DNA of 64,000 nt, from positions 460,566 to 524,565 of IMG/VR virus record IMGVR_UViG_3300027749_002876. One strand, 5' to 3'. Below the pieces are notes generated by a model. The model did no database searches. It had not been told where the DNA came from and saw nothing but the letters and a program-made list of their open reading frames with translations. The translations under genes and the position numbers were made by a program. This document shows positions 51,572 through 64,000 of the stretch, one piece after another; position 1 is the stretch's first letter; each line of letters begins with the position of its first letter.

Positions 51572-51588
51572 CGATTATGGATAGTTGG

Positions 51589-52542
51589 TTAACCGTAGGC
51601 TGCGGCTGCTAATTGGGTTCTAGCAGTACCTACACCAGTAGTGTCACTAGCAACTACACCTGTATTACTTACTAGATTGGTTGTTGATACTGCAACAGTT
51701 GTAGTACCATAACCAAATATAGCGTTATCAGTACCATAACCAGCGGCAGCTAGGTTATACCTAGCTGTACCTACACCAGTGGTGTCAGTGGCCACTACGC
51801 CTGTATTACTTACTAGATTAGTTATGGCTGTTCTACCAGCACCTCCGCTGGTAGTACCAAATCCAAATATAGCTTTATCTGTGCCGTATCCGGCAGCCGC
51901 CAAGGCATTTCTAGCAGTACCTACACCTGTGGTGTCTGTGGCTACAACACCGGCGTTACTTACTAGGTTAGTCACGGCTGTGGATGCACTATTGTCAAGT
52001 CCGTAACCAAATACAGCTTTGTCAGTGCTGTACCTTGCGGCTGCCAGGTTAACTCTGGCAGTACCTACACCTGTGGTATCTGTGGCCACTACTCCTGTAT
52101 TACTTACTAGATTAGTCATTGATACTCTGGCAAAAGAAGAATTATCTCCATACCCAAATATAGCTTTATCTGTACCATAACCAGCAGCCGCCAACGAATA
52201 TCTAGCAGTACCAACACCTGTGGTGTCAGTGGCTACAACACCAGCGTTACTTACTAGATTAGTCATGGATACAACGGTGCTGCCATCAGTAGTCCCGTAA
52301 CCAAATATAGCTTTATCTGTGCCATAGCCTGCGGCTGCTGGTCCGAATCTAGCAGTACCTACTCCTGCAGTATCAGTTGCTACTACACCTGTGTTTGATA
52401 CTAAATTGGTCATTGACACACCGGCAAAAGTAGGATTACCTACATATCCATAACCAAATATAGCTTTATTACCACTCGGTCCGGGAGAAACAGTACATCC
52501 AGCACCAGTAAATGTTATACCACCTGTTATTGTAATTGACAT
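51589..52542 (-). CDS. Six-repeat beta-propeller-like virion/adhesin protein (paralogue 1)
   Basis: 6 x ~48-aa KAIFGYG-var-TNLVSNTGVVATDTTGVGTAR-xx-LAAAGYGTD. Confidence 0.75.
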   Translation of the reverse strand: MSITITGGITFTGAGCTVSPGPSGNKAIFGYGYVGNPTFAGVSMTNLVSNTGVVATDTAGVGTARFGPAAAGYGTDKAIFGYGTTDGSTVVSMTNLVSNAGVVATDTTGVGTARYSLAAAGYGTDKAIFGYGDNSSFARVSMTNLVSNTGVVATDTTGVGTARVNLAAARYSTDKAVFGYGLDNSASTAVTNLVSNAGVVATDTTGVGTARNALAAAGYGTDKAIFGFGTTSGGAGRTAITNLVSNTGVVATDTTGVGTARYNLAAAGYGTDNAIFGYGTTTVAVSTTNLVSNTGVVASDTTGVGTARTQLAAAAYG

Positions 52543-55231: not shown

Positions 55232-57595
55232 TTAGCTCATTATAGGTAATACTTCAATGTCCGTACCTTGATCGTACCCATTGTCTCTTAGCCATTGAAT
55301 AGCTACACGATTAGCATCACGTTGAACATTGCCTATGCCACTAAAACGATGTACTTCACGTCCGTCTGCCATTACTTTCCAAGCACCGGTGAATGAACCA
55401 GGTATTTGTCTTTGTTGTTGAATAGCATTAGTGCTATCTGGGGCGGGTGCAGGTTGATCCATACGTGATAGACCATACCCTCGTCTATCAATACCCTGAT
55501 CCAATAACCAAGCTTGAGCTTTTTCTCTCGCATCTTCAACTGATGTAGCTTGGAATGTATAAACTATACTTTGGTCTGCTGTTCTGTATAGTTTGTAATC
55601 TTGTGTTTCGCCACTTGGTTCATTAGTAGCACGAATTGGTTGTGCTAGTATAGGTTCACTATCACCAACACGTCTTATACCAAATATGTCTCTAGCTTGT
55701 CTTGCTGGAAATCTGTGTGGACCGTGTTCAAGATAATCATTTAGTCGAATCAATGCTTCTCTATCATTAGTAATGCCTTCAGCATCCTCTACCTTTCTAT
55801 TAGTATCCAAATTAAATATTTCATATTTTGGTTTATCATCTTTAGGTTCTTCAAACTTACGAACTGGATAAACAGCGGCAGCAGTTAATGCACCTAAACG
55901 AATGTTCCATTCATCTGATGCTTTTTGTAGTGCTTCTTCTTTACTTGTAGCAACAACTTCAATACTTGCACCACTACGGCCACGACCTTCTTTATCAACA
56001 CGATACCAATACTTTTTGCCAACTTCATTGTCAGCCTTTACTTTACGTTCTATCTGTGCTTGTTTAACAAAGCTACGTAATGCAGCCTTTGGTAACTCAC
56101 CTGCGGCATACTTAGCAAAGTATTGAATCGTATCTGTATTATCTTTACTTGGCTCTAATAACTTATAAAGTTTTTTTAGATATTCTTTTCTATACTTCTG
56201 TGGGTCAACTGCGGCATCCAGTGCTACAACAAATCGTAACAGTGTGTTCTCAATCTTAGGTATATCAGTATCCAACCAATCACCTCCCGGGCTACGAAAC
56301 TCAATGTAACCATCTTTAGTATTGATACTTGTATATTTGGCTGTTGAACCACTATGAACTAGTTTGCTAGCAATATCACTTAGTCCACTTTTCATTCCAT
56401 CTAACAACTTTTTAGCGTTTGCTGGATTTTCTCTAATGTTATCTTTAACTTGTTTCAACGCACTCTTGCAAAAAGTGTTACCTTCACGGTCGAACTCTTT
56501 CAATATATATTCGTCACCTAATAGTAATGCTAGTTTAACATAGTCAAGCTTTTCTCTACTGAAGTCAGGAACACTTACGTTGATATGTAAGCCGGTACTA
56601 TCATTCGTATAGCAACCTGTTTTCTTAGCCCAAGCAACAACTTTGTTGAAGTCAGTTATCATTTCATCTATTGGCATTGGTGGACTTACAAACTCTAATC
56701 CAGCAGAACTGTAATCATCTGGCTCTAAGCTACCATCAGGTTCAACTACATAGTGACCTGCTTCTCTACGAGCACCGTGATAACGTTCGCTTGTATTGAC
56801 TGGCTTACCAATCATTCTACTGAACTCATCACCAACATCATCAACGCTTAAGTCACCACCATTGTCGGGATAAAACCAATGTGGCCAAGTAATATCATAG
56901 TTACTTTCAACGTCTTGCATTGTATAAAGACCTTCACTTTCTAACCAATCATTTTCGTCTGGCCAATCAGTTTCATCCATCCACTTTTCACGTGCATTGT
57001 CATACAATCTAGATTGTTCATCCCATTCTTCTTCAACAAACTGGTCGAACTTTTCACTTGCTAAATCGTGTGCTTCTTTCCAGTGTTTCCAAGCTTCATT
57101 GCCTTCTGTTTCACTGCGTTTAGATATCTTACCTGCTTTGTTCGCCGCTTCCTTTTGTTCATCTGTTAAGCCTAATTGGTCATACGCTTCATCAAGTGCG
57201 GCATCTTCATCAAACTCACCTTCACTTTCAATGTATTCACGTAGATAATCTTTACCTTCACTATCCCATTGTTCGCTACGTCTTTCATCTGCCCATTCGT
57301 GATAACCTTCAGTTAGCTCATCAACTAAACTATCTACTTCTCTAAGACCATTGTAGTTACGGTCATAGAAAAAGTTGCGTATGTTTTGAATACTACCAGC
57401 ACTTTCATCACTATCATAGTCAGCTTCTGGATCTCCGTCACCTTCTTCTCGTTTAACGTTTGGAACAATCATCTCAAATTCCATACCAGCCTGAGCACCA
57501 GTCTTAGCAGCCTCTTGCTTTAACCGTGTAGGATTCATTGCTACTTCGTCAAGTATCTCTGTATCTTCTAATATTATAAAGTCTGTTGCTCTCAT
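55232..57595 (-). CDS. MRAxEF-leader putative amidoligase (COOH-NH2 ligase) protein
   Basis: MRATDFIILE; GMEFE, EPDGSL, GLEFVSP, TNDSTGLHIN, KYTSIN, IEFRSPGG. Confidence 0.8.
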   Translation of the reverse strand: MRATDFIILEDTEILDEVAMNPTRLKQEAAKTGAQAGMEFEMIVPNVKREEGDGDPEADYDSDESAGSIQNIRNFFYDRNYNGLREVDSLVDELTEGYHEWADERRSEQWDSEGKDYLREYIESEGEFDEDAALDEAYDQLGLTDEQKEAANKAGKISKRSETEGNEAWKHWKEAHDLASEKFDQFVEEEWDEQSRLYDNAREKWMDETDWPDENDWLESEGLYTMQDVESNYDITWPHWFYPDNGGDLSVDDVGDEFSRMIGKPVNTSERYHGARREAGHYVVEPDGSLEPDDYSSAGLEFVSPPMPIDEMITDFNKVVAWAKKTGCYTNDSTGLHINVSVPDFSREKLDYVKLALLLGDEYILKEFDREGNTFCKSALKQVKDNIRENPANAKKLLDGMKSGLSDIASKLVHSGSTAKYTSINTKDGYIEFRSPGGDWLDTDIPKIENTLLRFVVALDAAVDPQKYRKEYLKKLYKLLEPSKDNTDTIQYFAKYAAGELPKAALRSFVKQAQIERKVKADNEVGKKYWYRVDKEGRGRSGASIEVVATSKEEALQKASDEWNIRLGALTAAAVYPVRKFEEPKDDKPKYEIFNLDTNRKVEDAEGITNDREALIRLNDYLEHGPHRFPARQARDIFGIRRVGDSEPILAQPIRATNEPSGETQDYKLYRTADQSIVYTFQATSVEDAREKAQAWLLDQGIDRRGYGLSRMDQPAPAPDSTNAIQQQRQIPGSFTGAWKVMADGREVHRFSGIGNVQRDANRVAIQWLRDNGYDQGTDIEVLPIMS

Positions 57596-57615
57596 TTTTA
57601 TTTCATCTTTTTTGT

Positions 57616-58566
57616 TTAACCGTAGGCTGCGGCTGCTAAACTATCCCTAGCAGTACCTACACCTGTAGTATCAGTAGCAACAACGCCTGTGTTTGATACT
57701 AAATTGGTTATTGCAGTTACTGAGCCACTATTACCATATCCAAATATAGCTTTATCAGCTCCATACCCGGCTGCTGAAAGAGCATACCTAGTAGTACCTA
57801 CACCTGTAGTATTTGTAGCAACAACACCGGTGTTACTTACTAAGTTGGTTGTTGCGGAAGGACCTACACTTGTGACATTTCCATACCCAAATATTGCTTT
57901 ATCAGTACCATACCCTGCGGCTGCTAGATAATATCTAGCAAGACCAACTCCTGTTGTATCTGTAGCAACTACTCCTGCATTACTTACTAAATTAGTCATT
58001 GACACTCCGCTACCGACAAGACCATATCCAAATATAGCTTTGTCAGTACCATAACCTGCAGCCGCAAGGGCAAACCTAGCAGTACCAACACCAGTGGTAT
58101 CTATGGCAACTACACCAGTGTTTGATACTAGATTGGTCATTGACAATCCGGTAAAACTTATGTTAGCACCATATCCAAATATAGCTTTATCGGTGCCATA
58201 TCCAGCGGCTGCAAGATAACCTCGCACTGTACCTACACCCGTTGTATCGGTAGCTATTACGCCTGTGTTTGATACTAAGTTAGTTAGTGAATATGCAACG
58301 GTATAACTAGCATTAAACCCATATCCAAATATAGCTTTGTCAGTACCATAACCTGCTGCCGCAAGGCCTTCTCTAGCAGTACCCACACCTGTAACATCAT
58401 TACCAACTACACCCGTGTTAGATACTAGATTAGTTATTGCTGTAACTGTACCGGTAGTTCCATATCCAAAGATAGCCTTTTGAGTGCCACCACCTCCACC
58501 CCCGCCACCAGGTGTAAACGTCCATCCGCCACTAAATGTTAATCCACCTGTTATTGTTACTGTCAT
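57616..58566 (-). CDS. Six-repeat beta-propeller-like virion/adhesin protein (paralogue 2)
   Basis: Same 6-repeat framework as 51589-52542; poly-Gly linker. Confidence 0.75.
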   Translation of the reverse strand: MTVTITGGLTFSGGWTFTPGGGGGGGGTQKAIFGYGTTGTVTAITNLVSNTGVVGNDVTGVGTAREGLAAAGYGTDKAIFGYGFNASYTVAYSLTNLVSNTGVIATDTTGVGTVRGYLAAAGYGTDKAIFGYGANISFTGLSMTNLVSNTGVVAIDTTGVGTARFALAAAGYGTDKAIFGYGLVGSGVSMTNLVSNAGVVATDTTGVGLARYYLAAAGYGTDKAIFGYGNVTSVGPSATTNLVSNTGVVATNTTGVGTTRYALSAAGYGADKAIFGYGNSGSVTAITNLVSNTGVVATDTTGVGTARDSLAAAAYG

Positions 58567-58567
58567 A

Positions 58568-59443
58568 TTATGTTGCCTTTTTCAACTTATTCCATTTATC
58601 ATATATATAGTTTTTCAACTCTATTGTATTTTTAATTTCATTGTCGTTCATGTATTTAATCAACTTCACAGCACTAGCTCTATCTCCTGCATCTGGCTTA
58701 CGTGCGTTACTTAAATCAACACCTATGTTATGATCGCCTGTAGTATCGTGATACCATAACAGGTTCTTTAGTTGTCTCTTTGCTCTATCGCTTAGATATT
58801 CCTCTTTGTCTTTTTCAATCAACTCAATCCAAGGCTTAACAAAGTCAGTTGGCTTACGAGTAGCACCTCTAGTTGGTTGACCCTTCAATACATCTTTGGC
58901 TTGACTTGGCTGAACACTCTTACGTGTATCTAATAATCTCCAAGCACTCTCATTTGTATAAAGATATGCTGGTATATCTTTTTGTTTAGCTGTTATCATT
59001 ATTTGCCGTGTTTGTGGGCTACGATATTCATTTTGTTCTTTTAATAAGATATGTATCTCTGTAACAGGTGTCATTGGTATACTTGGCTCTTTGCTGAACA
59101 CTCTATCTTCTGATTCACGTGTTCTAGTACCATCACTTTTTAACCAAGCACTATTCCAATAGTCTATTGGCTTAACAATGTATCTACTGTTGAACCAATC
59201 ACCGTTCATTTTAAACATTACACCACCCGTACCAACATATCTATGATAGTCACCAGTCGGTGTTCTTGTTAAACTTAAGAAGTATGGATAACCTTTTGGT
59301 GCATAATCTTCTTCGCTACTATTACCTGTTACACTTGCTAGTTCAAAGTTACCTGATTGTAGAATCTTTAATGCGGCATTGGTACTAGTGTAATGAAATA
59401 CTACGCTGGTTGCACGTTCTATTAAAAACTCGTTTGCTCTCAT
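58568..59443 (-). CDS. MRAxEF-leader protein, possible ADP-ribosyltransferase fold
   Basis: MRANEFLIE; VFHYT, FLSLTR, RESEDR. Confidence 0.5.
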   Translation of the reverse strand: MRANEFLIERATSVVFHYTSTNAALKILQSGNFELASVTGNSSEEDYAPKGYPYFLSLTRTPTGDYHRYVGTGGVMFKMNGDWFNSRYIVKPIDYWNSAWLKSDGTRTRESEDRVFSKEPSIPMTPVTEIHILLKEQNEYRSPQTRQIMITAKQKDIPAYLYTNESAWRLLDTRKSVQPSQAKDVLKGQPTRGATRKPTDFVKPWIELIEKDKEEYLSDRAKRQLKNLLWYHDTTGDHNIGVDLSNARKPDAGDRASAVKLIKYMNDNEIKNTIELKNYIYDKWNKLKKAT

Positions 59444-59450
59444 TATGTTA

Positions 59451-61457
59451 TTAATATGTTGGTAATGCCGCTGTGGGTGGCGTGAATGTGGTGGTGTATC
59501 TGGCCAAGCCTTTTGTGATGCGGAGATCGTCTATATAACCATTTAAATCATATACGTTATCTATAGTTTTACCTACTCTCAATGGACCTGTTGGCATCAT
59601 ACTGGTTGAGTTTGCACCGCTATAGCCCTGTACTCCATCATTGAATATTCGTAATGTTCCACTTGCTCTACAAATTGCAATATGAGTCCACGTGGCCGAA
59701 GCAACAGCAATTGAGCTGGCAATATCGCTTGCAATTAAAATATAAGGTTGATTGCTGGAATTTAACAGCACTGCCCAAGGCGATGCAGTTCCTGAACTTC
59801 TTGTGTCAAGTATTGTTTGATATGCTGATCCACCGGCTCTATAAAGCCAAAATTCTATTGTAAAATCTCCAGTACCAAATTGATTGGCCACAGAGAAAGG
59901 TGCAGTTAGATAATCACCTGTACCATCGAACGCCATACTTGATCCGCCAAATTTTGATTGTGCAGTAGAGATTTTGGCATCACCCACTGTTTCCAAGTTG
60001 TTCATCATTGCATTGTCAATGATACCAGCGTTGGTGTAGTTGAGTAGTAGGCTTGTGTTTGTGATTGCTGTTAGTGGTGATGTGGGTACGGTTACAGTGG
60101 TAACACCCGAACCTTTAACTATGCGAAGGTCTTCTATGTATGCTTTTGCATAAACAGGAGCACCGTCATTTGATGCACCAATCAACAAGGTGCCACTTGT
60201 ATCGATATTTGCAGTAACAGAAGTTGGTGTCATTGCTGATACACCATTGATAAATTGATACAATGTTCCGCTAACTCGGCTAGTAACTACATGAGTCCAG
60301 GTATTCAATGGAAAAGTTGAAGTGGTAATATAATTTGTGCCGGTATAAAAATTAAGTTTTCCGGCAGTATCCGTGTACCAAACCCAGGGAGCAACAGATC
60401 CAGTAGTAGTTCGTTTATCAAGTATTCCACTATTACCAGAAAAACTAGTTATATAAATCCACGCTTCTATTGTAAAATCACCAGTACCTAAATTTAGGGC
60501 AGCATTATTGGCCACACTCAAATAATCCCCTGAGCCGTCAAAGTATCCTGACCCACCGATTGTGCTGGCACTGTATGCGGCTGTGGGTTCGAATGGTGAG
60601 AATCGTTGTACAGTTGGTGAACCTGTTAGTGTAATGGCAAAAGTGTTTGCGGAGTTGTCAATGAATCTATTGCTTTGACAGGTTAATAATCTTGTACCCG
60701 ATATAGCAGTCAATGGAGTTGTGCTTGGAGTAAATGCTGATGAATAAACAACTGTATTTGTCAACCGGTAATTAGAAATGTAGCCAGAAAAATATGTTGG
60801 TTGATTGCCTTCAACACCAATATTGTCATTTTGGTTAAGACCAGCGGCTGCTACACCAGTATAAGTTGCAGAAGTTGTACTTAATACCCCGTTGACATAA
60901 ATTTTAATTGTAGTGCCATTAATTGTAGCCGCAATATGAGTCCATGTATTAAGTGGAACATCACTTGTAGACGCAGAATCTACATTTTTATATCCCCCGT
61001 CATACCAGTAAAATCTAACAGCTCCATTACGAATACCAAAATTAAAGTATGTTGCACCTTTAGCCTGAACGGGAGAAAACATCCAAGCAGATGCACCTGT
61101 GTTATATGCTGTTGGATACACCCATGCTTCAAATGTGGCAGTTATACCAGTAGCTGAACCTGTACAAAGAAAGTTTGATGCAGTTGTTCCTGCGGTTAAA
61201 TAACTGCTACCTGTAAAGAAATTACTCCAATTACTTCCATAAGGACTAAACGTGCCTTGTGTTGTATTACCGTTGCGAGTTATTGCAAAGTTGTTTGTAC
61301 TACCATCTAAAAATGTATTGTTCTGTGCAAGATTTGTACCATTCCCTGGTAACAACAATGAGTTGTACATAAAGTATGGGTCGTTTGCGGCAGCTCCCGA
61401 AGGTGCAAACGTCAATCCACCACTAAATGTTATACCTCCGGTTACTGTTACTGTCAT
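59451..61457 (-). CDS. Virion fibre/adhesin with three LamG (ConA-like) domains
   Basis: Three FTIE/TFEAW...WTH.A...Y(F)xNG...GYI.(D/N).R.T units; SGYFDGSGDYL. Confidence 0.85.
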   Translation of the reverse strand: MTVTVTGGITFSGGLTFAPSGAAANDPYFMYNSLLLPGNGTNLAQNNTFLDGSTNNFAITRNGNTTQGTFSPYGSNWSNFFTGSSYLTAGTTASNFLCTGSATGITATFEAWVYPTAYNTGASAWMFSPVQAKGATYFNFGIRNGAVRFYWYDGGYKNVDSASTSDVPLNTWTHIAATINGTTIKIYVNGVLSTTSATYTGVAAAGLNQNDNIGVEGNQPTYFSGYISNYRLTNTVVYSSAFTPSTTPLTAISGTRLLTCQSNRFIDNSANTFAITLTGSPTVQRFSPFEPTAAYSASTIGGSGYFDGSGDYLSVANNAALNLGTGDFTIEAWIYITSFSGNSGILDKRTTTGSVAPWVWYTDTAGKLNFYTGTNYITTSTFPLNTWTHVVTSRVSGTLYQFINGVSAMTPTSVTANIDTSGTLLIGASNDGAPVYAKAYIEDLRIVKGSGVTTVTVPTSPLTAITNTSLLLNYTNAGIIDNAMMNNLETVGDAKISTAQSKFGGSSMAFDGTGDYLTAPFSVANQFGTGDFTIEFWLYRAGGSAYQTILDTRSSGTASPWAVLLNSSNQPYILIASDIASSIAVASATWTHIAICRASGTLRIFNDGVQGYSGANSTSMMPTGPLRVGKTIDNVYDLNGYIDDLRITKGLARYTTTFTPPTAALPTY

Positions 61458-61466
61458 AATATTCCT

Positions 61467-61904
61467 TTATTCACGGTTCTTTAATATACTACGCAACATC
61501 CAACTATGTTTTTCGTGTGCGTCTAGTCGTTCAGCAATGAAGTTTGCGATACCTTGTTTGTTCTCATCTTCAGCAGAAACAAAACAACCATTTAGTAAAT
61601 CAATCATCTTTTCATTATCAGATAATAACTCAGCAAACATTAAGTGTGGACGAGGAACTTTAAGTTGGTCCTCAATGATAGTTAGTTCTGCATAACGTGA
61701 CAAACTACCCGGTGCATAGCTATCTAGTGTGCGAATATACTCTCCAATCGGGTCAATGGAATTATACACCTCAGCATAAAAATCACCTAAAAACTTGTGG
61801 TATTGCGGGAAGTTATCACCCTCTATATTAAAATGAAAACCATGTATTTTTACATAAAATGCAAAAGTACTACCTAACAATACCTTAAGATTATCTACTA
61901 ACAT
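61467..61904 (-). CDS. dps: Dps/ferritin-like DNA protection protein
   Basis: HGFHFNIEGDNFPQYH, IDPIGEYIR, HEKHSWMLRS. Confidence 0.88.
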   Translation of the reverse strand: MLVDNLKVLLGSTFAFYVKIHGFHFNIEGDNFPQYHKFLGDFYAEVYNSIDPIGEYIRTLDSYAPGSLSRYAELTIIEDQLKVPRPHLMFAELLSDNEKMIDLLNGCFVSAEDENKQGIANFIAERLDAHEKHSWMLRSILKNRE

Positions 61905-61942
61905 TTGAAATTCCTTATATAACTATATTTATCTATTTTAGC

Positions 61943-62011
61943 ATAAATAAAAGTGAGGATCGCGGTACTGGAAATACCCACCCTCTCTAATGCTAAAAAG
62001 GAGCAATCAGC
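61943..62011 (+). promoter_or_regulatory. Late-promoter motif and structured leader of HNH gene
   Basis: ATAAATA, then GAGG..GGUA-CUGGAAA-UACC..CCUC hairpin and UGCU-AAAAAGG-AGCA over the SD. Confidence 0.5.
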
Positions 62012-62608
62012 TTGACTATTTATTCAACTTCGGACCATCGTAAGATTTACGAAACACACATTGGTCCAATTCCAAAAGACATAGAAGGTCGTAGTTATGA
62101 AATTCATCATATTGACGGAAATCACAATAACAATGAATTGTCAAATTTATTGTGTGTTTCTATTAGAGAACACTATGAAATACATAAATCTCAGGGAGAC
62201 CTTAAGGCTTGTTTAATTATGTCTCAAAGAATGGGTGTTTCCCCTGAAGAAAAATCACACCTAGCAAAATTATCAAATACAGGAAAAAATAATCCAATGT
62301 ATGGTACTATTTGGATTAACGACGGAATTATTAATAAGAAAATTCGCGGAGATATACCCGAAGGCTGGGCACGAGGCAGATTAATATCACACGAACACGC
62401 TTCAAAATTTACAAAACGATCCAAAGTTGGTACTAATAACACTAGATTTAATAAGACAATTTATTGTTTTGAGAATATTAAAACACTAGAACAAATTCAT
62501 AGTACATCATATGAGTTTGCTATTAAGTATGGAGTTAGCACTGTTGGAATAAGAGGTCTCATTCAAAAAAACAAGACCTCTTATAAGGGTTGGCGAATGG
62601 TTTTTTGA
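62012..62608 (+). CDS. Free-standing HNH homing endonuclease
   Basis: YEIHHIDGNHNNN...NL...EH...H; NUMOD-like GKNNPMYG, WINDG, KGW; opposite strand to neighbours. Confidence 0.88.
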   Translation: MTIYSTSDHRKIYETHIGPIPKDIEGRSYEIHHIDGNHNNNELSNLLCVSIREHYEIHKSQGDLKACLIMSQRMGVSPEEKSHLAKLSNTGKNNPMYGTIWINDGIINKKIRGDIPEGWARGRLISHEHASKFTKRSKVGTNNTRFNKTIYCFENIKTLEQIHSTSYEFAIKYGVSTVGIRGLIQKNKTSYKGWRMVF

Positions 62609-64000
62609 TTATTCATTTCTAGGCAATACGAATACTCTACCGCCTGCTAAAATAGCCATATAGTTTCCTATGCCACGCTCACCCATTACAGCTTGGGGGA
62701 TAACAATTTGTTGCCCGCCGCGTGGTCTGATGCCACCAGGTTCTAACATAATCATTTTATATTCTTGTCCATCAACTGTAACAGTACCTGCTTGTCTATC
62801 AGCACGTTCTGCACGAACTAATCCTTGACCGGGTATAGTTGCAGTAGATGGTGTTGCCGCCGGAGCTGGATCAGTTGCTTGTTGTGTAGCAGTGGGTTTC
62901 ATTCCACCTACTTGATTACCGTCAGCATCATATGTTACACGACCGTGTGCGGCACCTGTACCTAATGCCATTGCACCAGTCAATGCGGCGGCACCTAATT
63001 TTTGTTTCCAACCTTCGTCTACATTTTCATTAGACTTTTTCTTTGTATCAACATTGATAGCTTTACCACTACGATCTGGATTAGGATCTTCTCTACGCTT
63101 ACGTTGAGCGGCACTTGCACGACCCTTCTTACCTAAACTATGCGCTTTACTTTGAGGCAAGCATTTTGGTTTACCTTCTCCTGGTTCTCTAGCACACGGA
63201 CCTTTAATCTTTCCTTTAGTATCCATGCGAACCCATTTTTCTTTGTTGAACCAATCGTGCAAACTTTCATCTGCTTGTTCAATACCTTCTAGTATAGAAC
63301 TTTCATTCTTCTTTCCACCGTTGCCCCAGTTACTTGCACCTTTTTTACGACATTTAACTAATGCCCCAGACGCATAAGCACTTGGCCATACTTTATAACG
63401 ACTCTTTACTTTATAGTAGCAAGCATCTTTCTTTTCGTTCATTAGTTCTTCGCTAACCATTTCACCACCACAGTGTGGGCAACTATGTTGTGCTTCCGCC
63501 ACACCTTGCTGACCCGGCACTGTATCAACAATGTTTATCATTTTATCAGGAACTATTTGTACAGGAACATTGCCGTTGTATCCGGCGGCTTGGTATGCGA
63601 TAAATCTATGATTCCCATCTATTACAAAAAGTTTACCTTTGTTATTCCAAACAACTAACGGACCTAATTTCCCATTTTGTTTTAGTTGTGGTAAAAGATT
63701 GTTATTGACCCATTGAGCAACCTTTGGATCCTTCATTGACTTACCATTTTCCCACATTTGTAATTTATTAAAAGGTGCTTCAGTTACTGGCAAACTTTTC
63801 TTTATCCTGTCATCAACAGTAGCACCTTTATAAGCAGGATTTGTGTAGATAGTTACTAGTTGCTGTTCCAAGGCTTCCGCCACACCTTGCTGTCCTAGTA
63901 ATGATTGCACCCAAGGAATGAACGTGTTAATGATCCAGTCATTGTGCTGTTTGCTTTTGTCCAGTGTGCTGGAATCTGCCACACGACCGTTTATGGTCAC
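62609..64000 (-). CDS. Modular polyprotein-like late protein (5' end beyond window) with ParB-like domain
   Basis: QQGVAE x2; VIDGNHR ParB motif; CPHC; DACYYKVKSRYKVWPSAYASG and WFNKEKWV...KCLP modules; internal signal-peptide-like segment. Confidence 0.75.
   Translation of the reverse strand: MTINGRVADSSTLDKSKQHNDWIINTFIPWVQSLLGQQGVAEALEQQLVTIYTNPAYKGATVDDRIKKSLPVTEAPFNKLQMWENGKSMKDPKVAQWVNNNLLPQLKQNGKLGPLVVWNNKGKLFVIDGNHRFIAYQAAGYNGNVPVQIVPDKMINIVDTVPGQQGVAEAQHSCPHCGGEMVSEELMNEKKDACYYKVKSRYKVWPSAYASGALVKCRKKGASNWGNGGKKNESSILEGIEQADESLHDWFNKEKWVRMDTKGKIKGPCAREPGEGKPKCLPQSKAHSLGKKGRASAAQRKRREDPNPDRSGKAINVDTKKKSNENVDEGWKQKLGAAALTGAMALGTGAAHGRVTYDADGNQVGGMKPTATQQATDPAPAATPSTATIPGQGLVRAERADRQAGTVTVDGQEYKMIMLEPGGIRPRGGQQIVIPQAVMGERGIGNYMAILAGGRVFVLPRNE
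63492..63892. repeat. Exact 20-bp direct repeat flanking ParB-like domain
   Basis: gcttccgccacaccttgctg at 63492-63511 and 63873-63892 (encodes QQGVAE on minus). Confidence 0.9.

What the first reader, a model, noticed from the sequence alone, without database searches (positions are those of the whole stretch)
63492..63892. Exact 20-bp repeat encoding QQGVAE brackets a ParB-like domain: in-frame domain-cassette shuffling
Seen: CAGCAAGGTGTGGCGGAAGC occurs twice, in frame, 381 nt apart, precisely flanking a ~120-aa VIDGNHR ParB/Srx-like domain. Identity includes all wobble positions and uses GTG-GCG codons, unusual in this A/T-ending genome, so the DNA itself looks constrained. Inference: one element serves as both recombination site and protease cleavage site (..VAE|). 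Domains could then be inserted or excised as cassettes within a capsid-targeted polyprotein and released as separate proteins during head maturation, like an integron operating inside an ORF.
Basis: partly seen in the sequence, partly recalled or inferred. Interest (0 to 1): 0.78.

Follow-up and report, generated by a model that had tools for sequence, protein, structure and literature searches.

The report
Conserved in-frame linker shuffles phage domains
The 20-bp repeat is two copies of a roughly 21-nt linker, conserved even at silent codon positions, that separates swappable domains in multi-domain proteins of ~350-kb freshwater T4-like phages; it looks like both a head-protease cut site and the place where domains are exchanged.

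Summary
CAGCAAGGTGTGGCGGAAGC lies twice on the minus strand (63492-63511, 63873-63892), in frame and 381 nt apart, around a ParB/Srx-fold domain. The pair is not a private duplication. It is two instances of a family-wide linker, consensus AAG CAA GGT GTG GCG GAA GGC (K/Q-Q-G-V-A-E|G).

- **Silent sites are nearly fixed.** In 57 non-redundant linkers from ParB-selected loci, GCG fills 93% of Ala positions against a 7% background. The same VAE peptide in the phage's own scaffold uses common codons, and the N-terminal leader's silent sites vary normally.
- **Homology breakpoints fall at linkers.** 43.5% lie within 15 nt of one, against 3% expected.
- **The cassette moves.** The repeat-to-repeat ParB unit is 98.5-99% identical in a non-syntenic gene of a relative whose syntenic flanks are 71-76% identical. 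Other homologues have this slot empty (exactly 381 nt fewer) or holding another module.
- **Cleavage is inferred.** The phage encodes a T4-type prohead protease. The linker's Glu never varies (0/78). Relatives carry leaders resembling T4's capsid-targeting sequence.

Best reading: polyvalent virion proteins whose linker is both cleavage site (inferred) and homologous-recombination island (comparative evidence). No integron-like machinery was found. Cleavage, packaging and live recombination are untested.

The parts
62609..64000 (-). 3' part (463 codons plus stop) of a polyvalent polyprotein gene, cut by the end of the record. The full-length copy is G000 175621-179142 (L004:5622-9143:-), 1173 aa.
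   Evidence: ORF list and translation; exact 3,997-bp duplicate and full ORF.
63893..64000 (-). C-terminal end of 'module X' (..NIKPVTINGRVADSS..FIPWVQSLLG). In relatives this module lies before or after ParB, or directly before the Zn-ribbon cassette.
   Evidence: P0015 and P0018 have ParB then X. P0187, P0172 and P0180 have X in other arrangements.
63873..63892 (-). Linker copy 1: CAG CAA GGT GTG GCG GAA GC (Q Q G V A E A). Predicted prohead-protease site after Glu (codon 63875-63877) and a homology island.
63512..63872 (-). ParB/Srx-fold module (..VIDGNHRFIAY..). It is the mobile cassette body.
   Evidence: It is 98.5-99% nt identical to G001 230513-230913 in a different gene.
63492..63511 (-). 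Linker copy 2, identical to copy 1. Predicted cleavage after Glu (codon 63494-63496).
   Evidence: DNA homology to the related copy at G000 13610 starts inside this linker.
63014..63491 (-). Zn-ribbon plus DUF5872-like cassette (AQHSCPHCGG..KVWPSAYASGALVKC..DPNPDRSGKAINV..NENVDE). It is very common at 80-97% identity as the C-terminal module of thousands of relatives.
   Evidence: Pfam DUF5872 match is weak. PHROG 727. More than 7,700 hits, with HSPs starting at the linker. Cyanophage homologues exist.
62612..63013 (-). C-terminal extension after a V-D-E|G junction. It holds a hydrophobic Gly/Ala segment, a Pro/Thr-rich spacer and a beta-rich tail. It is shared with P0152 and with the copy in L005.

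Best explanation
The two 20-bp repeats are two copies of a roughly 21-nt in-frame linker element, consensus AAG CAA GGT GTG GCG GAA GGC, peptide K/Q-Q-G-V-A-E|G/A/N. The element separates autonomous domain modules in long 'polyvalent' proteins of a clade of ~340-360-kb freshwater T4-like jumbo phages.

Shown:
- The element is conserved at all its silent positions across dozens of unrelated flanking contexts.
- Nucleotide-homology breakpoints between genes concentrate on it.
- The ParB/Srx module between the two copies behaves as a cassette. It is found nearly identical in other genes, it is absent with exactly one linker left, and it is replaced by another module.

Inferred:
(a) At the protein level the linker is a cleavage site (hydrophobic-x-Glu|) for the phage's T4-type S77 prohead protease. 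A single N-terminal leader would then carry a chain of effector domains into the prohead, where they are cut apart and later delivered with the DNA.
(b) At the DNA level the identical linkers act as short homology islands. The phage's own recombination system (a RecA/UvsX-type recombinase is encoded) exchanges, inserts or deletes modules in frame at these islands during co-infection or between paralogous genes. That exchange in turn keeps the linkers identical (concerted evolution).

The ParB/Srx module itself is probably an NTP-dependent nuclease or NTPase effector, as proposed for ParB domains of polyvalent proteins.
For: **DNA-level conservation**
- 89 GVAE linkers in 41 ParB-selected loci: GGT 98% (background 44%), GTG 76% (21%), GCG 92% (7%).
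- 57 non-redundant contexts show a discrete conserved core of about 21 nt with unconserved flanks.
- A scan with free silent positions gave 63 of 83 sites as T,G,G.
- 161 of 162 occurrences of the 17-mer are in frame.
- 78 of 78 near-consensus sites are in frame.

**Controls**
- 42 other VAE tripeptides in the own genome never use GTG-GCG. The scaffold sites LVAEG and FVAES use common codons.
- Silent sites in 199 leaders vary normally.
- The canonical linker's anti-SD affinity is below the median of its synonymous versions.
- There is no RNA structure around the linkers.

**Breakpoints**
- 113 of 260 lie within 15 nt of a linker, against a 3.1% null with a maximum of 7.7%.

**Cassette behaviour**
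- L004 6506-6906 is 98.5-99% identical to G001 230513-230913, in a non-syntenic 826-aa gene. Syntenic flanks are 71-76% identical and the MCP is 96% identical.
- P0187 has X-linker-Cterm, exactly 381 nt less. P0172 has a different 108-aa module in the slot.
- The ParB family has 47 different upstream and 45 different downstream module families.
- Module order differs between the copy at L004 and the one at L005.

**Protease site**
- S77 protease, scaffold and Gp23 MCP are present.
- The MCP has QLLAE|S and the scaffold has LVAEG and FVAES.
- The first two positions of the Glu codon are invariant in 78 of 78 sites, while G, V and A vary.
- The linkers have pLDDT below 50 in the AF2 model.
- Leaders such as MRAQEFITE and MKINEIITE resemble the T4 capsid-targeting sequence. 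In some relatives a leader is joined directly to a module at E| (PMC9026906, PMC3012670).

**Other**
- A RecA/UvsX-like gene is present.
- The effector-like domain repertoire of relatives matches polyvalent proteins: GH19, deaminase, Pol-beta NTase, amidoligase, sigma70_r4 (PMC5512222).
Against: - No direct evidence exists for cleavage, packaging or ejection. There is no cultured relative and no proteome. The protease-peptide complex prediction gave no answer.
- The focal protein's own leader (MSKILKGLLNE) is not the canonical one.
- Breakpoints at linkers could arise from selection for in-frame, domain-preserving recombinants rather than from preferential crossing-over there.
- 20-21 nt is at the low end of the homology known to support recombination (own knowledge).
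- No clean 381-nt deletion variant was seen in the runs. Only assembled contigs could be laid, and the one joint at the repeats had a 20-nt side.
- Short-read assemblies can mis-phase the flanks of a 400-nt cassette shared at 99% identity, and the record itself is chimeric. Individual full-length architectures are therefore less certain than the boundaries themselves.
- No T4 late promoter motif was found near the gene.
Confidence: 0.62

Rival explanations
1. The linker is only a peptide feature, either a protease site or a flexible inter-domain spacer. Silent-site conservation would come from a translational role, such as a rare GTG-GCG pair slowing the ribosome at domain boundaries. Breakpoints would pile up at linkers only because recombinants elsewhere are non-functional.
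For: GTG and GCG are rare codons here. Linkers are disordered inter-domain segments. Selection for intact domains must filter recombinants. The invariant Glu shows strong peptide-level selection.
Against: Common codons are fixed as well: GGT 96-98% against 44-58% background, and CAA 95%. What is conserved is therefore sequence identity, not codon rarity. Anti-SD affinity is unremarkable, rank 1349 of 2048. The same peptide in the scaffold uses common codons. A 98.5-99%-identical cassette ends exactly at the outer edges of both linkers with unrelated flanks, which needs a homology-guided or site-guided join.
Confidence: 0.2
2. The linker is the target of a dedicated enzyme, either a site-specific recombinase (integron-like) or a sequence-specific homing-type endonuclease whose breaks start cassette exchange.
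For: The conserved site is discrete and about 21 nt long. An HNH endonuclease gene abuts the polyprotein stop codon in this phage but not in relatives. A GIY-YIG-like ORF follows the MCP; this is read from the sequence only.
Against: The record has no tyrosine recombinase. The site is not palindromic and has no significant fold. Linkers occur in many loci with no adjacent nuclease gene. No circles or excision products were seen.
Confidence: 0.08
3. The pair is a private event: a local duplication, a target-site duplication left by a mobile ParB-nuclease element, chance, or an assembly artefact.
For: Direct repeats flank a nuclease-like domain. The record is chimeric.
Against: The same linker flanks hundreds of unrelated modules in independent assemblies and samples. 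0 of 100 shuffles reproduce the pair. ParB is only one of more than 200 module families bounded this way.
Confidence: 0.03

Closest known systems
T4 internal proteins (IPI-III, Alt) with capsid targeting sequence, processed by prohead protease gp21
   Same: A short N-terminal leader ending in hydrophobic-x-Glu. Cleavage occurs C-terminal to Glu by an S77 protease encoded next to the scaffold and MCP genes. The cargo behind a conserved leader is highly variable (PMC9026906, PMC3012670).
   Different: T4 internal proteins are single small proteins, each with its own leader. Here many domains are strung behind one leader and separated by repeated internal sites, and those sites are conserved at the DNA level while the leader is not. 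Cleavage here is inferred.
Polyvalent proteins of phages and conjugative elements (Iyer et al. 2017, PMC5512222)
   Same: Between 2 and 15 unrelated effector domains sit in one polypeptide, predicted to be delivered with the DNA. ParB/Srx, Pol-beta NTase, deaminase and peptidoglycan-hydrolase domains recur, with extensive mosaicism.
   Different: That work does not describe a conserved linker; the word 'linker' is absent from the paper. It proposes built-in MPTase autoproteolysis. Here a uniform linker matching the head protease's specificity and fixed at silent sites bounds the modules.
Short conserved motifs that mediate modular shuffling in T4-type phages: PeSLs between genes, and glycine-rich motifs between hypervariable segments of gp38 adhesins
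   Same: Short conserved sequences flank interchangeable segments and mark exchange points (PMC2839356, PMC4122927, PMC3157838).
   Different: PeSLs are intergenic promoter-terminator cassettes. The gp38 motifs are structural core elements within one domain. Here the motif is an in-frame inter-domain linker with a second predicted role as a cleavage site, and it moves whole folded domains.
Polymorphic toxin systems (CdiA VENN motif, Rhs DPxGL motif). This comparison rests on my own knowledge and was not checked here.
   Same: A conserved peptide-coding motif demarcates a swappable C-terminal module. In Rhs it is also a proteolytic cleavage point.
   Different: Those systems have one boundary per protein and use long conserved upstream homology. 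Here there are multiple identical short boundaries per protein, so internal cassettes can be inserted, deleted and permuted.
Integron gene cassettes
   Same: Arrays of exchangeable units are bounded by a repeated site.
   Different: No integrase is present. There is no attC-like folded palindrome. The units are in-frame protein domains, not genes. The mechanism is most likely general homologous recombination.
phiKZ/SPN3US-type inner-body and ejection proteins cut at multiple sites by the prohead protease
   Same: Large head-internal proteins are cleaved after Glu at several sites (PMC9026906, PMC7411985).
   Different: Cleavage sites there have few determinants and are not reported as nucleotide-conserved cassette boundaries.

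Membership tests
ParB/Srx superfamily domain | ParB/Srx alpha+beta fold | tested here: met
   AF2 model pLDDT 88, pTM 0.81. Foldseek top hits are sulfiredoxin, ParB, Noc, SbnI and PadC at probability 1.0.
ParB/Srx superfamily domain | Conserved active-site motif with Arg (DGxHR) | tested here: met
   D92, G93, H95 and R96 are invariant in 36 aligned modules.
ParB/Srx superfamily domain | Sequence-profile match above the curated threshold | tested here: inconclusive
   The focal sequence alone gives Pfam ParB_N at E 0.02, below the cut-off. The family profile hits ParB 7bnk at E 3.9e-8, and 30 of 36 members match ParB_N.
T4-type prohead-protease substrates / capsid-targeted internal proteins | The phage encodes an S77 (gp21) prohead protease in a T4-like head module | tested here: met
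   PF03420 at 94 bits, G000 353734-354165, next to scaffold-like and Gp23 MCP genes.
T4-type prohead-protease substrates / capsid-targeted internal proteins | N-terminal capsid targeting sequence of about 10 residues ending in hydrophobic-x-Glu | tested here: inconclusive
   Relatives start MRAQEFITE, MRFTEIISE or MKINEIITE. The focal protein starts MSKILKGLLNE, which ends in L-N-E but is not canonical. The targeting function is not testable here.
T4-type prohead-protease substrates / capsid-targeted internal proteins | Cleavage C-terminal to Glu at the motif; presence of the products in virions | not testable with these tools
   Only indirect evidence exists: invariant Glu, similar sites in the scaffold and MCP, disordered linkers. 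The complex prediction gave no answer.
Polyvalent proteins (Iyer et al. 2017) | Several unrelated effector-type domains in one phage-encoded polypeptide, with mosaic architectures | tested here: met
   The focal protein has at least 6 modules. 211 module families were found in 190 proteins. Relatives carry GH19, deaminase, NTase, amidoligase and sigma70_r4.
Polyvalent proteins (Iyer et al. 2017) | Late or virion-gene context and delivery into the host | not tested
   Neighbours are other leader-bearing ORFs, a ferritin-like gene and an HNH gene. No late promoter motif was found. Delivery is not testable here.
Integron-like site-specific cassette system | Tyrosine recombinase (integrase) associated with the array | tested here: not met
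   PF00589 has no match in the 524-kb record, while the controls ring in 14 of 14 genomes.
Integron-like site-specific cassette system | Structured, imperfectly palindromic recombination site | tested here: not met
   The 21-nt core is not palindromic. Folding z-scores are -0.70 and 0.12, and the two contexts fold differently.
Short-homology shuffling motifs of T4-type phages (PeSL / gp38 glycine-rich motif type) | A short sequence conserved at nucleotide level flanking variable modules, with exchange junctions at it | tested here: met
Short-homology shuffling motifs of T4-type phages (PeSL / gp38 glycine-rich motif type) | Recombinants at the motif obtained or observed directly | tested here: inconclusive
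   Only Logan contigs were available. Unitigs break at linkers, and no clean junction read was found.

The most novel reading that the evidence does not exclude
The 21-nt linker is an evolved dual-code element: a protease site whose exact DNA spelling is itself maintained by selection because it serves as a recombination signal, possibly cut by a phage nuclease such as the adjacent HNH enzyme. This clade would then have an in-ORF, in-frame combinatorial system for assembling injected effector sets, a bacterial-virus counterpart of exon shuffling.
Probability: 0.2. Interest if true: 0.92.

Novelty: new variant of a known kind. Interest (0 to 1): 0.8.

Why it matters
If the reading is right, these phages load a whole, rapidly re-assortable set of effector domains (nuclease-like ParB, deaminases, nucleotidyltransferases, wall hydrolases and others) into the capsid behind one leader, and then release them with the head protease.

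The linker would explain how very large effector diversity is generated without breaking reading frames. More than 7,700 related protein clusters were found, and ParB alone has about 45 different neighbours on each side.

It also gives a simple sequence handle, a 17-21-mer, for finding virion-delivered effectors in metagenomes. It offers a natural design for multi-cargo delivery in T4-type capsids.

There is a practical warning too. Cassettes shared between genes fragment and mis-join short-read assemblies of these phages, as this record itself shows.

Tried and rejected
- **Concatemer hypothesis for the record.** Rejected. Only the last 4 kb repeats. The record is better read as a 347.5-kb circle plus a fragment of a relative.
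- **Read-level search for a 381-nt deletion or other joints.** Only Logan contigs could be laid. The single joint at the repeats had a 20-nt side, so it is uninformative.
- **Protease-linker complex prediction.** No answer; not used as evidence.
- **T4 late promoter TATAAATA near the gene.** None found.
- **RNA structure at the linkers.** None beyond shuffles.
- **SD-like pausing.** The canonical spelling is weaker than the median synonymous spelling.
- **Integrase.** None.
- **Cultured relatives.** tblastn against isolated phages found only the Zn-ribbon/DUF5872 cassette, in T4-like cyanophages. No linker-bearing isolate turned up, so no proteome exists to consult.
- **Literature.** No paper holds ENFADG, MRAQEF or QGVAEG in a phage context.
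- **Deep conservation claim.** A distant phage (G005, MCP 31-43% identical) has only one near-canonical linker, at a contig end. I do not claim conservation beyond the ~350-kb clade, whose MCPs are 74-96% identical.
Full report
**1. The observation**

CAGCAAGGTGTGGCGGAAGC occurs exactly twice in the window, at 63492-63511 and 63873-63892. Both copies are on the minus strand. No further match exists at up to three mismatches, and none of 100 shuffles gave two matches. The copies are 381 nt (127 codons) apart and in frame in a minus-strand ORF that runs from 62609 off the end of the window. Both encode QQGVAEA.

In this genome GTG is 9.3% of Val codons and GCG 6.2% of Ala codons. GVAE would be spelled GGT GTG GCG GAA with probability 0.0027.

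**2. Where the window lies**

The window is the last 64 kb of a 524,565-bp IMG/VR record. The final 3,997 bp are identical to G000 173016-177012. That duplicate gives the full gene, a 1173-aa protein at L004:5622-9143:-.

A self-comparison shows that 173016-520568 closes on itself as a 347,553-bp circle. The first ~155-173 kb of the record is an inverted, collinear relative at 73-91% identity. Three further results fit this reading:
- The unitig depth is 26.5 on one side of the junction and about 43 on the other.
- Related near-complete genomes are 338-360 kb.
- Only one prohead protease gene and one MCP gene are present.

The record is therefore most likely a mis-joined assembly. The second, 1220-aa copy (L005) is probably the orthologue in a related phage rather than a paralogue.

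The phage is T4-like in head assembly. It has an S77 protease, an acidic core-like protein, a scaffold and a Gp23-family MCP. The runs that hold it are freshwater metagenomes.

**3. The domain between the repeats**

The domain belongs to the ParB/Srx superfamily.
- The focal sequence alone is sub-threshold in Pfam (E 0.02).
- A 36-member profile hits solved ParB proteins at E 3.9e-8.
- 30 of 36 members match ParB_N.
- The AF2 model is confident (pLDDT 88), and both linkers are disordered with pLDDT below 50.
- Foldseek returns sulfiredoxin, ParB, Noc and SbnI at probability 1.0.
- D-G-x-H-R is invariant.

**4. The repeat is a family-wide linker**

The ParB module has 203 representatives (at 50% clustering) in 1.8 billion proteins. 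It sits at every position in proteins of 100-1759 aa, and most alignments run from linker to linker.

Fetched members show several recurring features:
- [K/Q]QGVAE[G/N/A] appears repeatedly between unrelated segments.
- N-termini read MRAQEFITE, MRFTEIISE or MKINEIITE.
- A basic module beginning NFADGKNPG is a common C-terminus.

Cutting 190 non-redundant proteins at the linker gives 211 module families. The ParB family has 47 different upstream and 45 different downstream neighbours. Relatives add GH19, amidoligase, cytidine deaminase, Pol-beta nucleotidyltransferase and sigma-70 region 4 domains. This matches the polyvalent proteins of Iyer et al. (PMC5512222). That paper does not mention a linker.

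**5. The DNA itself is conserved**

The loci tested here were chosen by ParB protein similarity, not by linker DNA.
- Of 89 GVAE linkers, 59 are exactly GGTGTGGCGGAA.
- GGT fills 98% of Gly positions (background 44%), GTG 76% of Val (21%) and GCG 92% of Ala (7%).
- 57 non-redundant contexts give a discrete conserved core, A-A-G-CAA-GGT-GTG-GCG-GAA-GG-C, with no conservation on either side.
- An independent scan that left the three four-fold silent positions free gave T,G,G at 63 of 83 sites.
- The spelling with the genome's preferred codons occurs in 50 stretches.

Controls:
- 42 other VAE tripeptides in the same genome never use GTG-GCG. The scaffold's LVAEG and FVAES sites and the MCP's LLAE|S site use common codons.
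- 199 leader sequences show ordinary silent-site variation.

When sites are picked by DNA similarity alone (up to 4 of 21 mismatches), all 78 are in frame. Silent positions differ at about 11% per site. The first two positions of the Glu codon never differ, while Gly, Val and Ala do change. Both a peptide constraint (Glu is absolute) and a nucleotide constraint therefore act on the element.

**6. Boundaries map to the linker**

Among homology breakpoints inside linker-bearing ORFs, 113 of 260 lie within 15 nt of a linker core. Randomised positions in the same ORFs give 3.1%, with a maximum of 7.7% in 500 trials.

The focal repeat-to-repeat unit (L004 6506-6906) is 98.5-99% identical to G001 230513-230913. 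There it sits in a different, non-syntenic 826-aa polyprotein. The syntenic flanks of the two phages are only 71-76% identical, and their MCPs are 96% identical. The alignment has 6 differences between the linkers and loses similarity abruptly outside both.

Homologues of the focal gene fill this slot in three ways:
- P0187 has module X, one linker, then the Zn-ribbon cassette. The two HSPs overlap on that one linker, and the focal gene has exactly 381 nt more.
- P0172 has a different 108-aa module between two linkers. Its gene is followed by a ferritin-like gene, as the focal gene is apart from the inserted HNH gene (section 9).
- P0180 and P0153 show further arrangements.

Between the L004 and L005 copies, DNA homology to the C-terminal cassette begins inside the linker, and two N-terminal modules are in swapped order. 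P0015 and P0018 have ParB before module X, whereas the focal protein has X before ParB.

**7. Mechanism**

The cleavage role is inferred from these points:
- The phage encodes an S77 protease.
- T4 gp21 cuts after Glu, and the short T4 leader targets cargo into the prohead (PMC9026906, PMC3012670).
- The linker's Glu is invariant.
- The scaffold and MCP carry the same hydrophobic-Ala-Glu motif.
- The linkers are disordered.
- Some relatives join a leader directly to a module at E| (for example ..IVDE|NFADG).

The recombination role is inferred from the breakpoint statistics, from the abrupt cassette edges, and from silent-site identity that neither the peptide nor translation explains. The phage encodes a RecA/UvsX-family recombinase. 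Repeated exchange at linkers would itself keep them identical.

Rival mechanisms fared as follows:
- SD-like pausing. The canonical spelling ranks 1349 of 2048 for anti-SD affinity.
- RNA structure. None was detected.
- An integron-like integrase. None was found.
- A dedicated nuclease cannot be excluded. An HNH gene abuts the gene's stop codon here but not in relatives.

**8. Limits**

- Nothing shows cleavage, packaging or ejection directly, and the complex prediction gave no answer.
- The runs could only be laid as assembled contigs. Unitigs break at the linkers, depth spikes there, and no clean deletion joint was found.
- Cassettes of ~400 nt at 99% identity can be mis-phased by short-read assemblers. 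The boundaries are therefore better supported than any single full-length architecture.
- The linker system is documented for a clade whose MCPs are 74-96% identical. A distant phage has one near-canonical copy at a contig end, and I do not rely on it.

**9. Comparison and novelty**

The components are known:
- T4 leaders and gp21 processing.
- Polyvalent proteins.
- Short conserved motifs as shuffling points in T4-type phages: PeSLs and the gp38 glycine-rich motifs (PMC2839356, PMC4122927, PMC3157838).
- Motif-bounded toxin modules in CDI and Rhs systems (own knowledge).

What I did not find described is a uniform, multi-copy, in-frame inter-domain linker with both properties: it matches the head protease's specificity, and it is fixed at its silent sites as the junction for whole-domain cassettes. 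I rate it a new variant of a known kind, of high interest.

Noticed in passing
window 60004-64000 (G000 520569-524565) and G000 173016-177012: The record's last 3,997 bp exactly repeat an internal stretch, so 173016-520568 closes as a 347,553-bp circle. The first ~155-173 kb is an inverted collinear relative at 73-91% identity. Unitig depth differs across the junction (26.5 against about 43), and related genomes are 338-360 kb. The 524-kb record is probably a mis-joined assembly of one complete phage plus part of another.
   Followed up: partly
window 62012-62608 (+): A free-standing HNH endonuclease gene (Pfam HNH_3, E 1.2e-10) abuts the polyprotein stop codon, between it and the ferritin-like gene (61467-61904). 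Relatives (L005, L100, L357) have the ferritin-like gene directly after the polyprotein. It looks like a homing-endonuclease insertion and could stimulate local recombination.
   Followed up: partly
window 58568-59443 (-), about 33036 (+), about 6825 (-); also G000 180214, 258676, 259068: Other ORFs start with the same leader type (MRANEFLIE, MRINEFITE, MRATEFLIE, MKISQIIQE). The record has about 12 such ORFs, suggesting a larger set of head-targeted proteins, several of them single-domain.
   Followed up: partly
L004 7208-7232 (G000 about 177208-177231): Two linkers lie in tandem with nothing between them (NEGVAEGVAENN; GGTGTGGCGGAA then GGTGTGGCAGAA). This could be the scar of an unequal exchange or an empty slot.
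   Followed up: no
window 51585-52471 and 57612-58495; G000 218-220k, 269-272k, 276-278k, 287-288k, 357-361k, 452-454k: A multi-copy family of ~1-kb units at about 70% nt identity, often in tandem. The copy at window 57616-58566 (316 aa) has no Pfam match.
   Followed up: no
window 59451-61457 (-) and 55232-57595 (-): The first is a 668-aa protein with three Laminin_G_3 / ConA-like lectin domains; its N-terminal part lies in the exact duplicate. The second is a 787-aa protein with an amidoligase domain. An amidoligase also occurs inside the polyvalent relative P0006.
   Followed up: no
L088 2669-3649 (G000 about 356776-357756): The ORF right after the MCP gene begins MKHFIYKTTHTNGKYYIGRHS..GYLGSGKW. 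This looks like a GIY-YIG (Seg-type) homing endonuclease. It was read from the sequence only.
   Followed up: no
L006 3809-4972 (Synechococcus phage Syn19 gene 101): The Zn-ribbon/DUF5872 cassette has homologues in T4-like cyanophages, in a conserved hypothetical gene near gp13-gp16. Those proteins lack GVAE linkers but repeat EEVTNE[A/G].
   Followed up: no
L004 6400-7600 in runs X1-X4: Logan unitigs end at the linker positions (6506, 6887, 7222), and summed depth rises 3-5 fold in bins that hold linkers or shared cassettes. Assemblies of these phages are prone to fragmentation and chimeras at polyprotein genes.
   Followed up: partly
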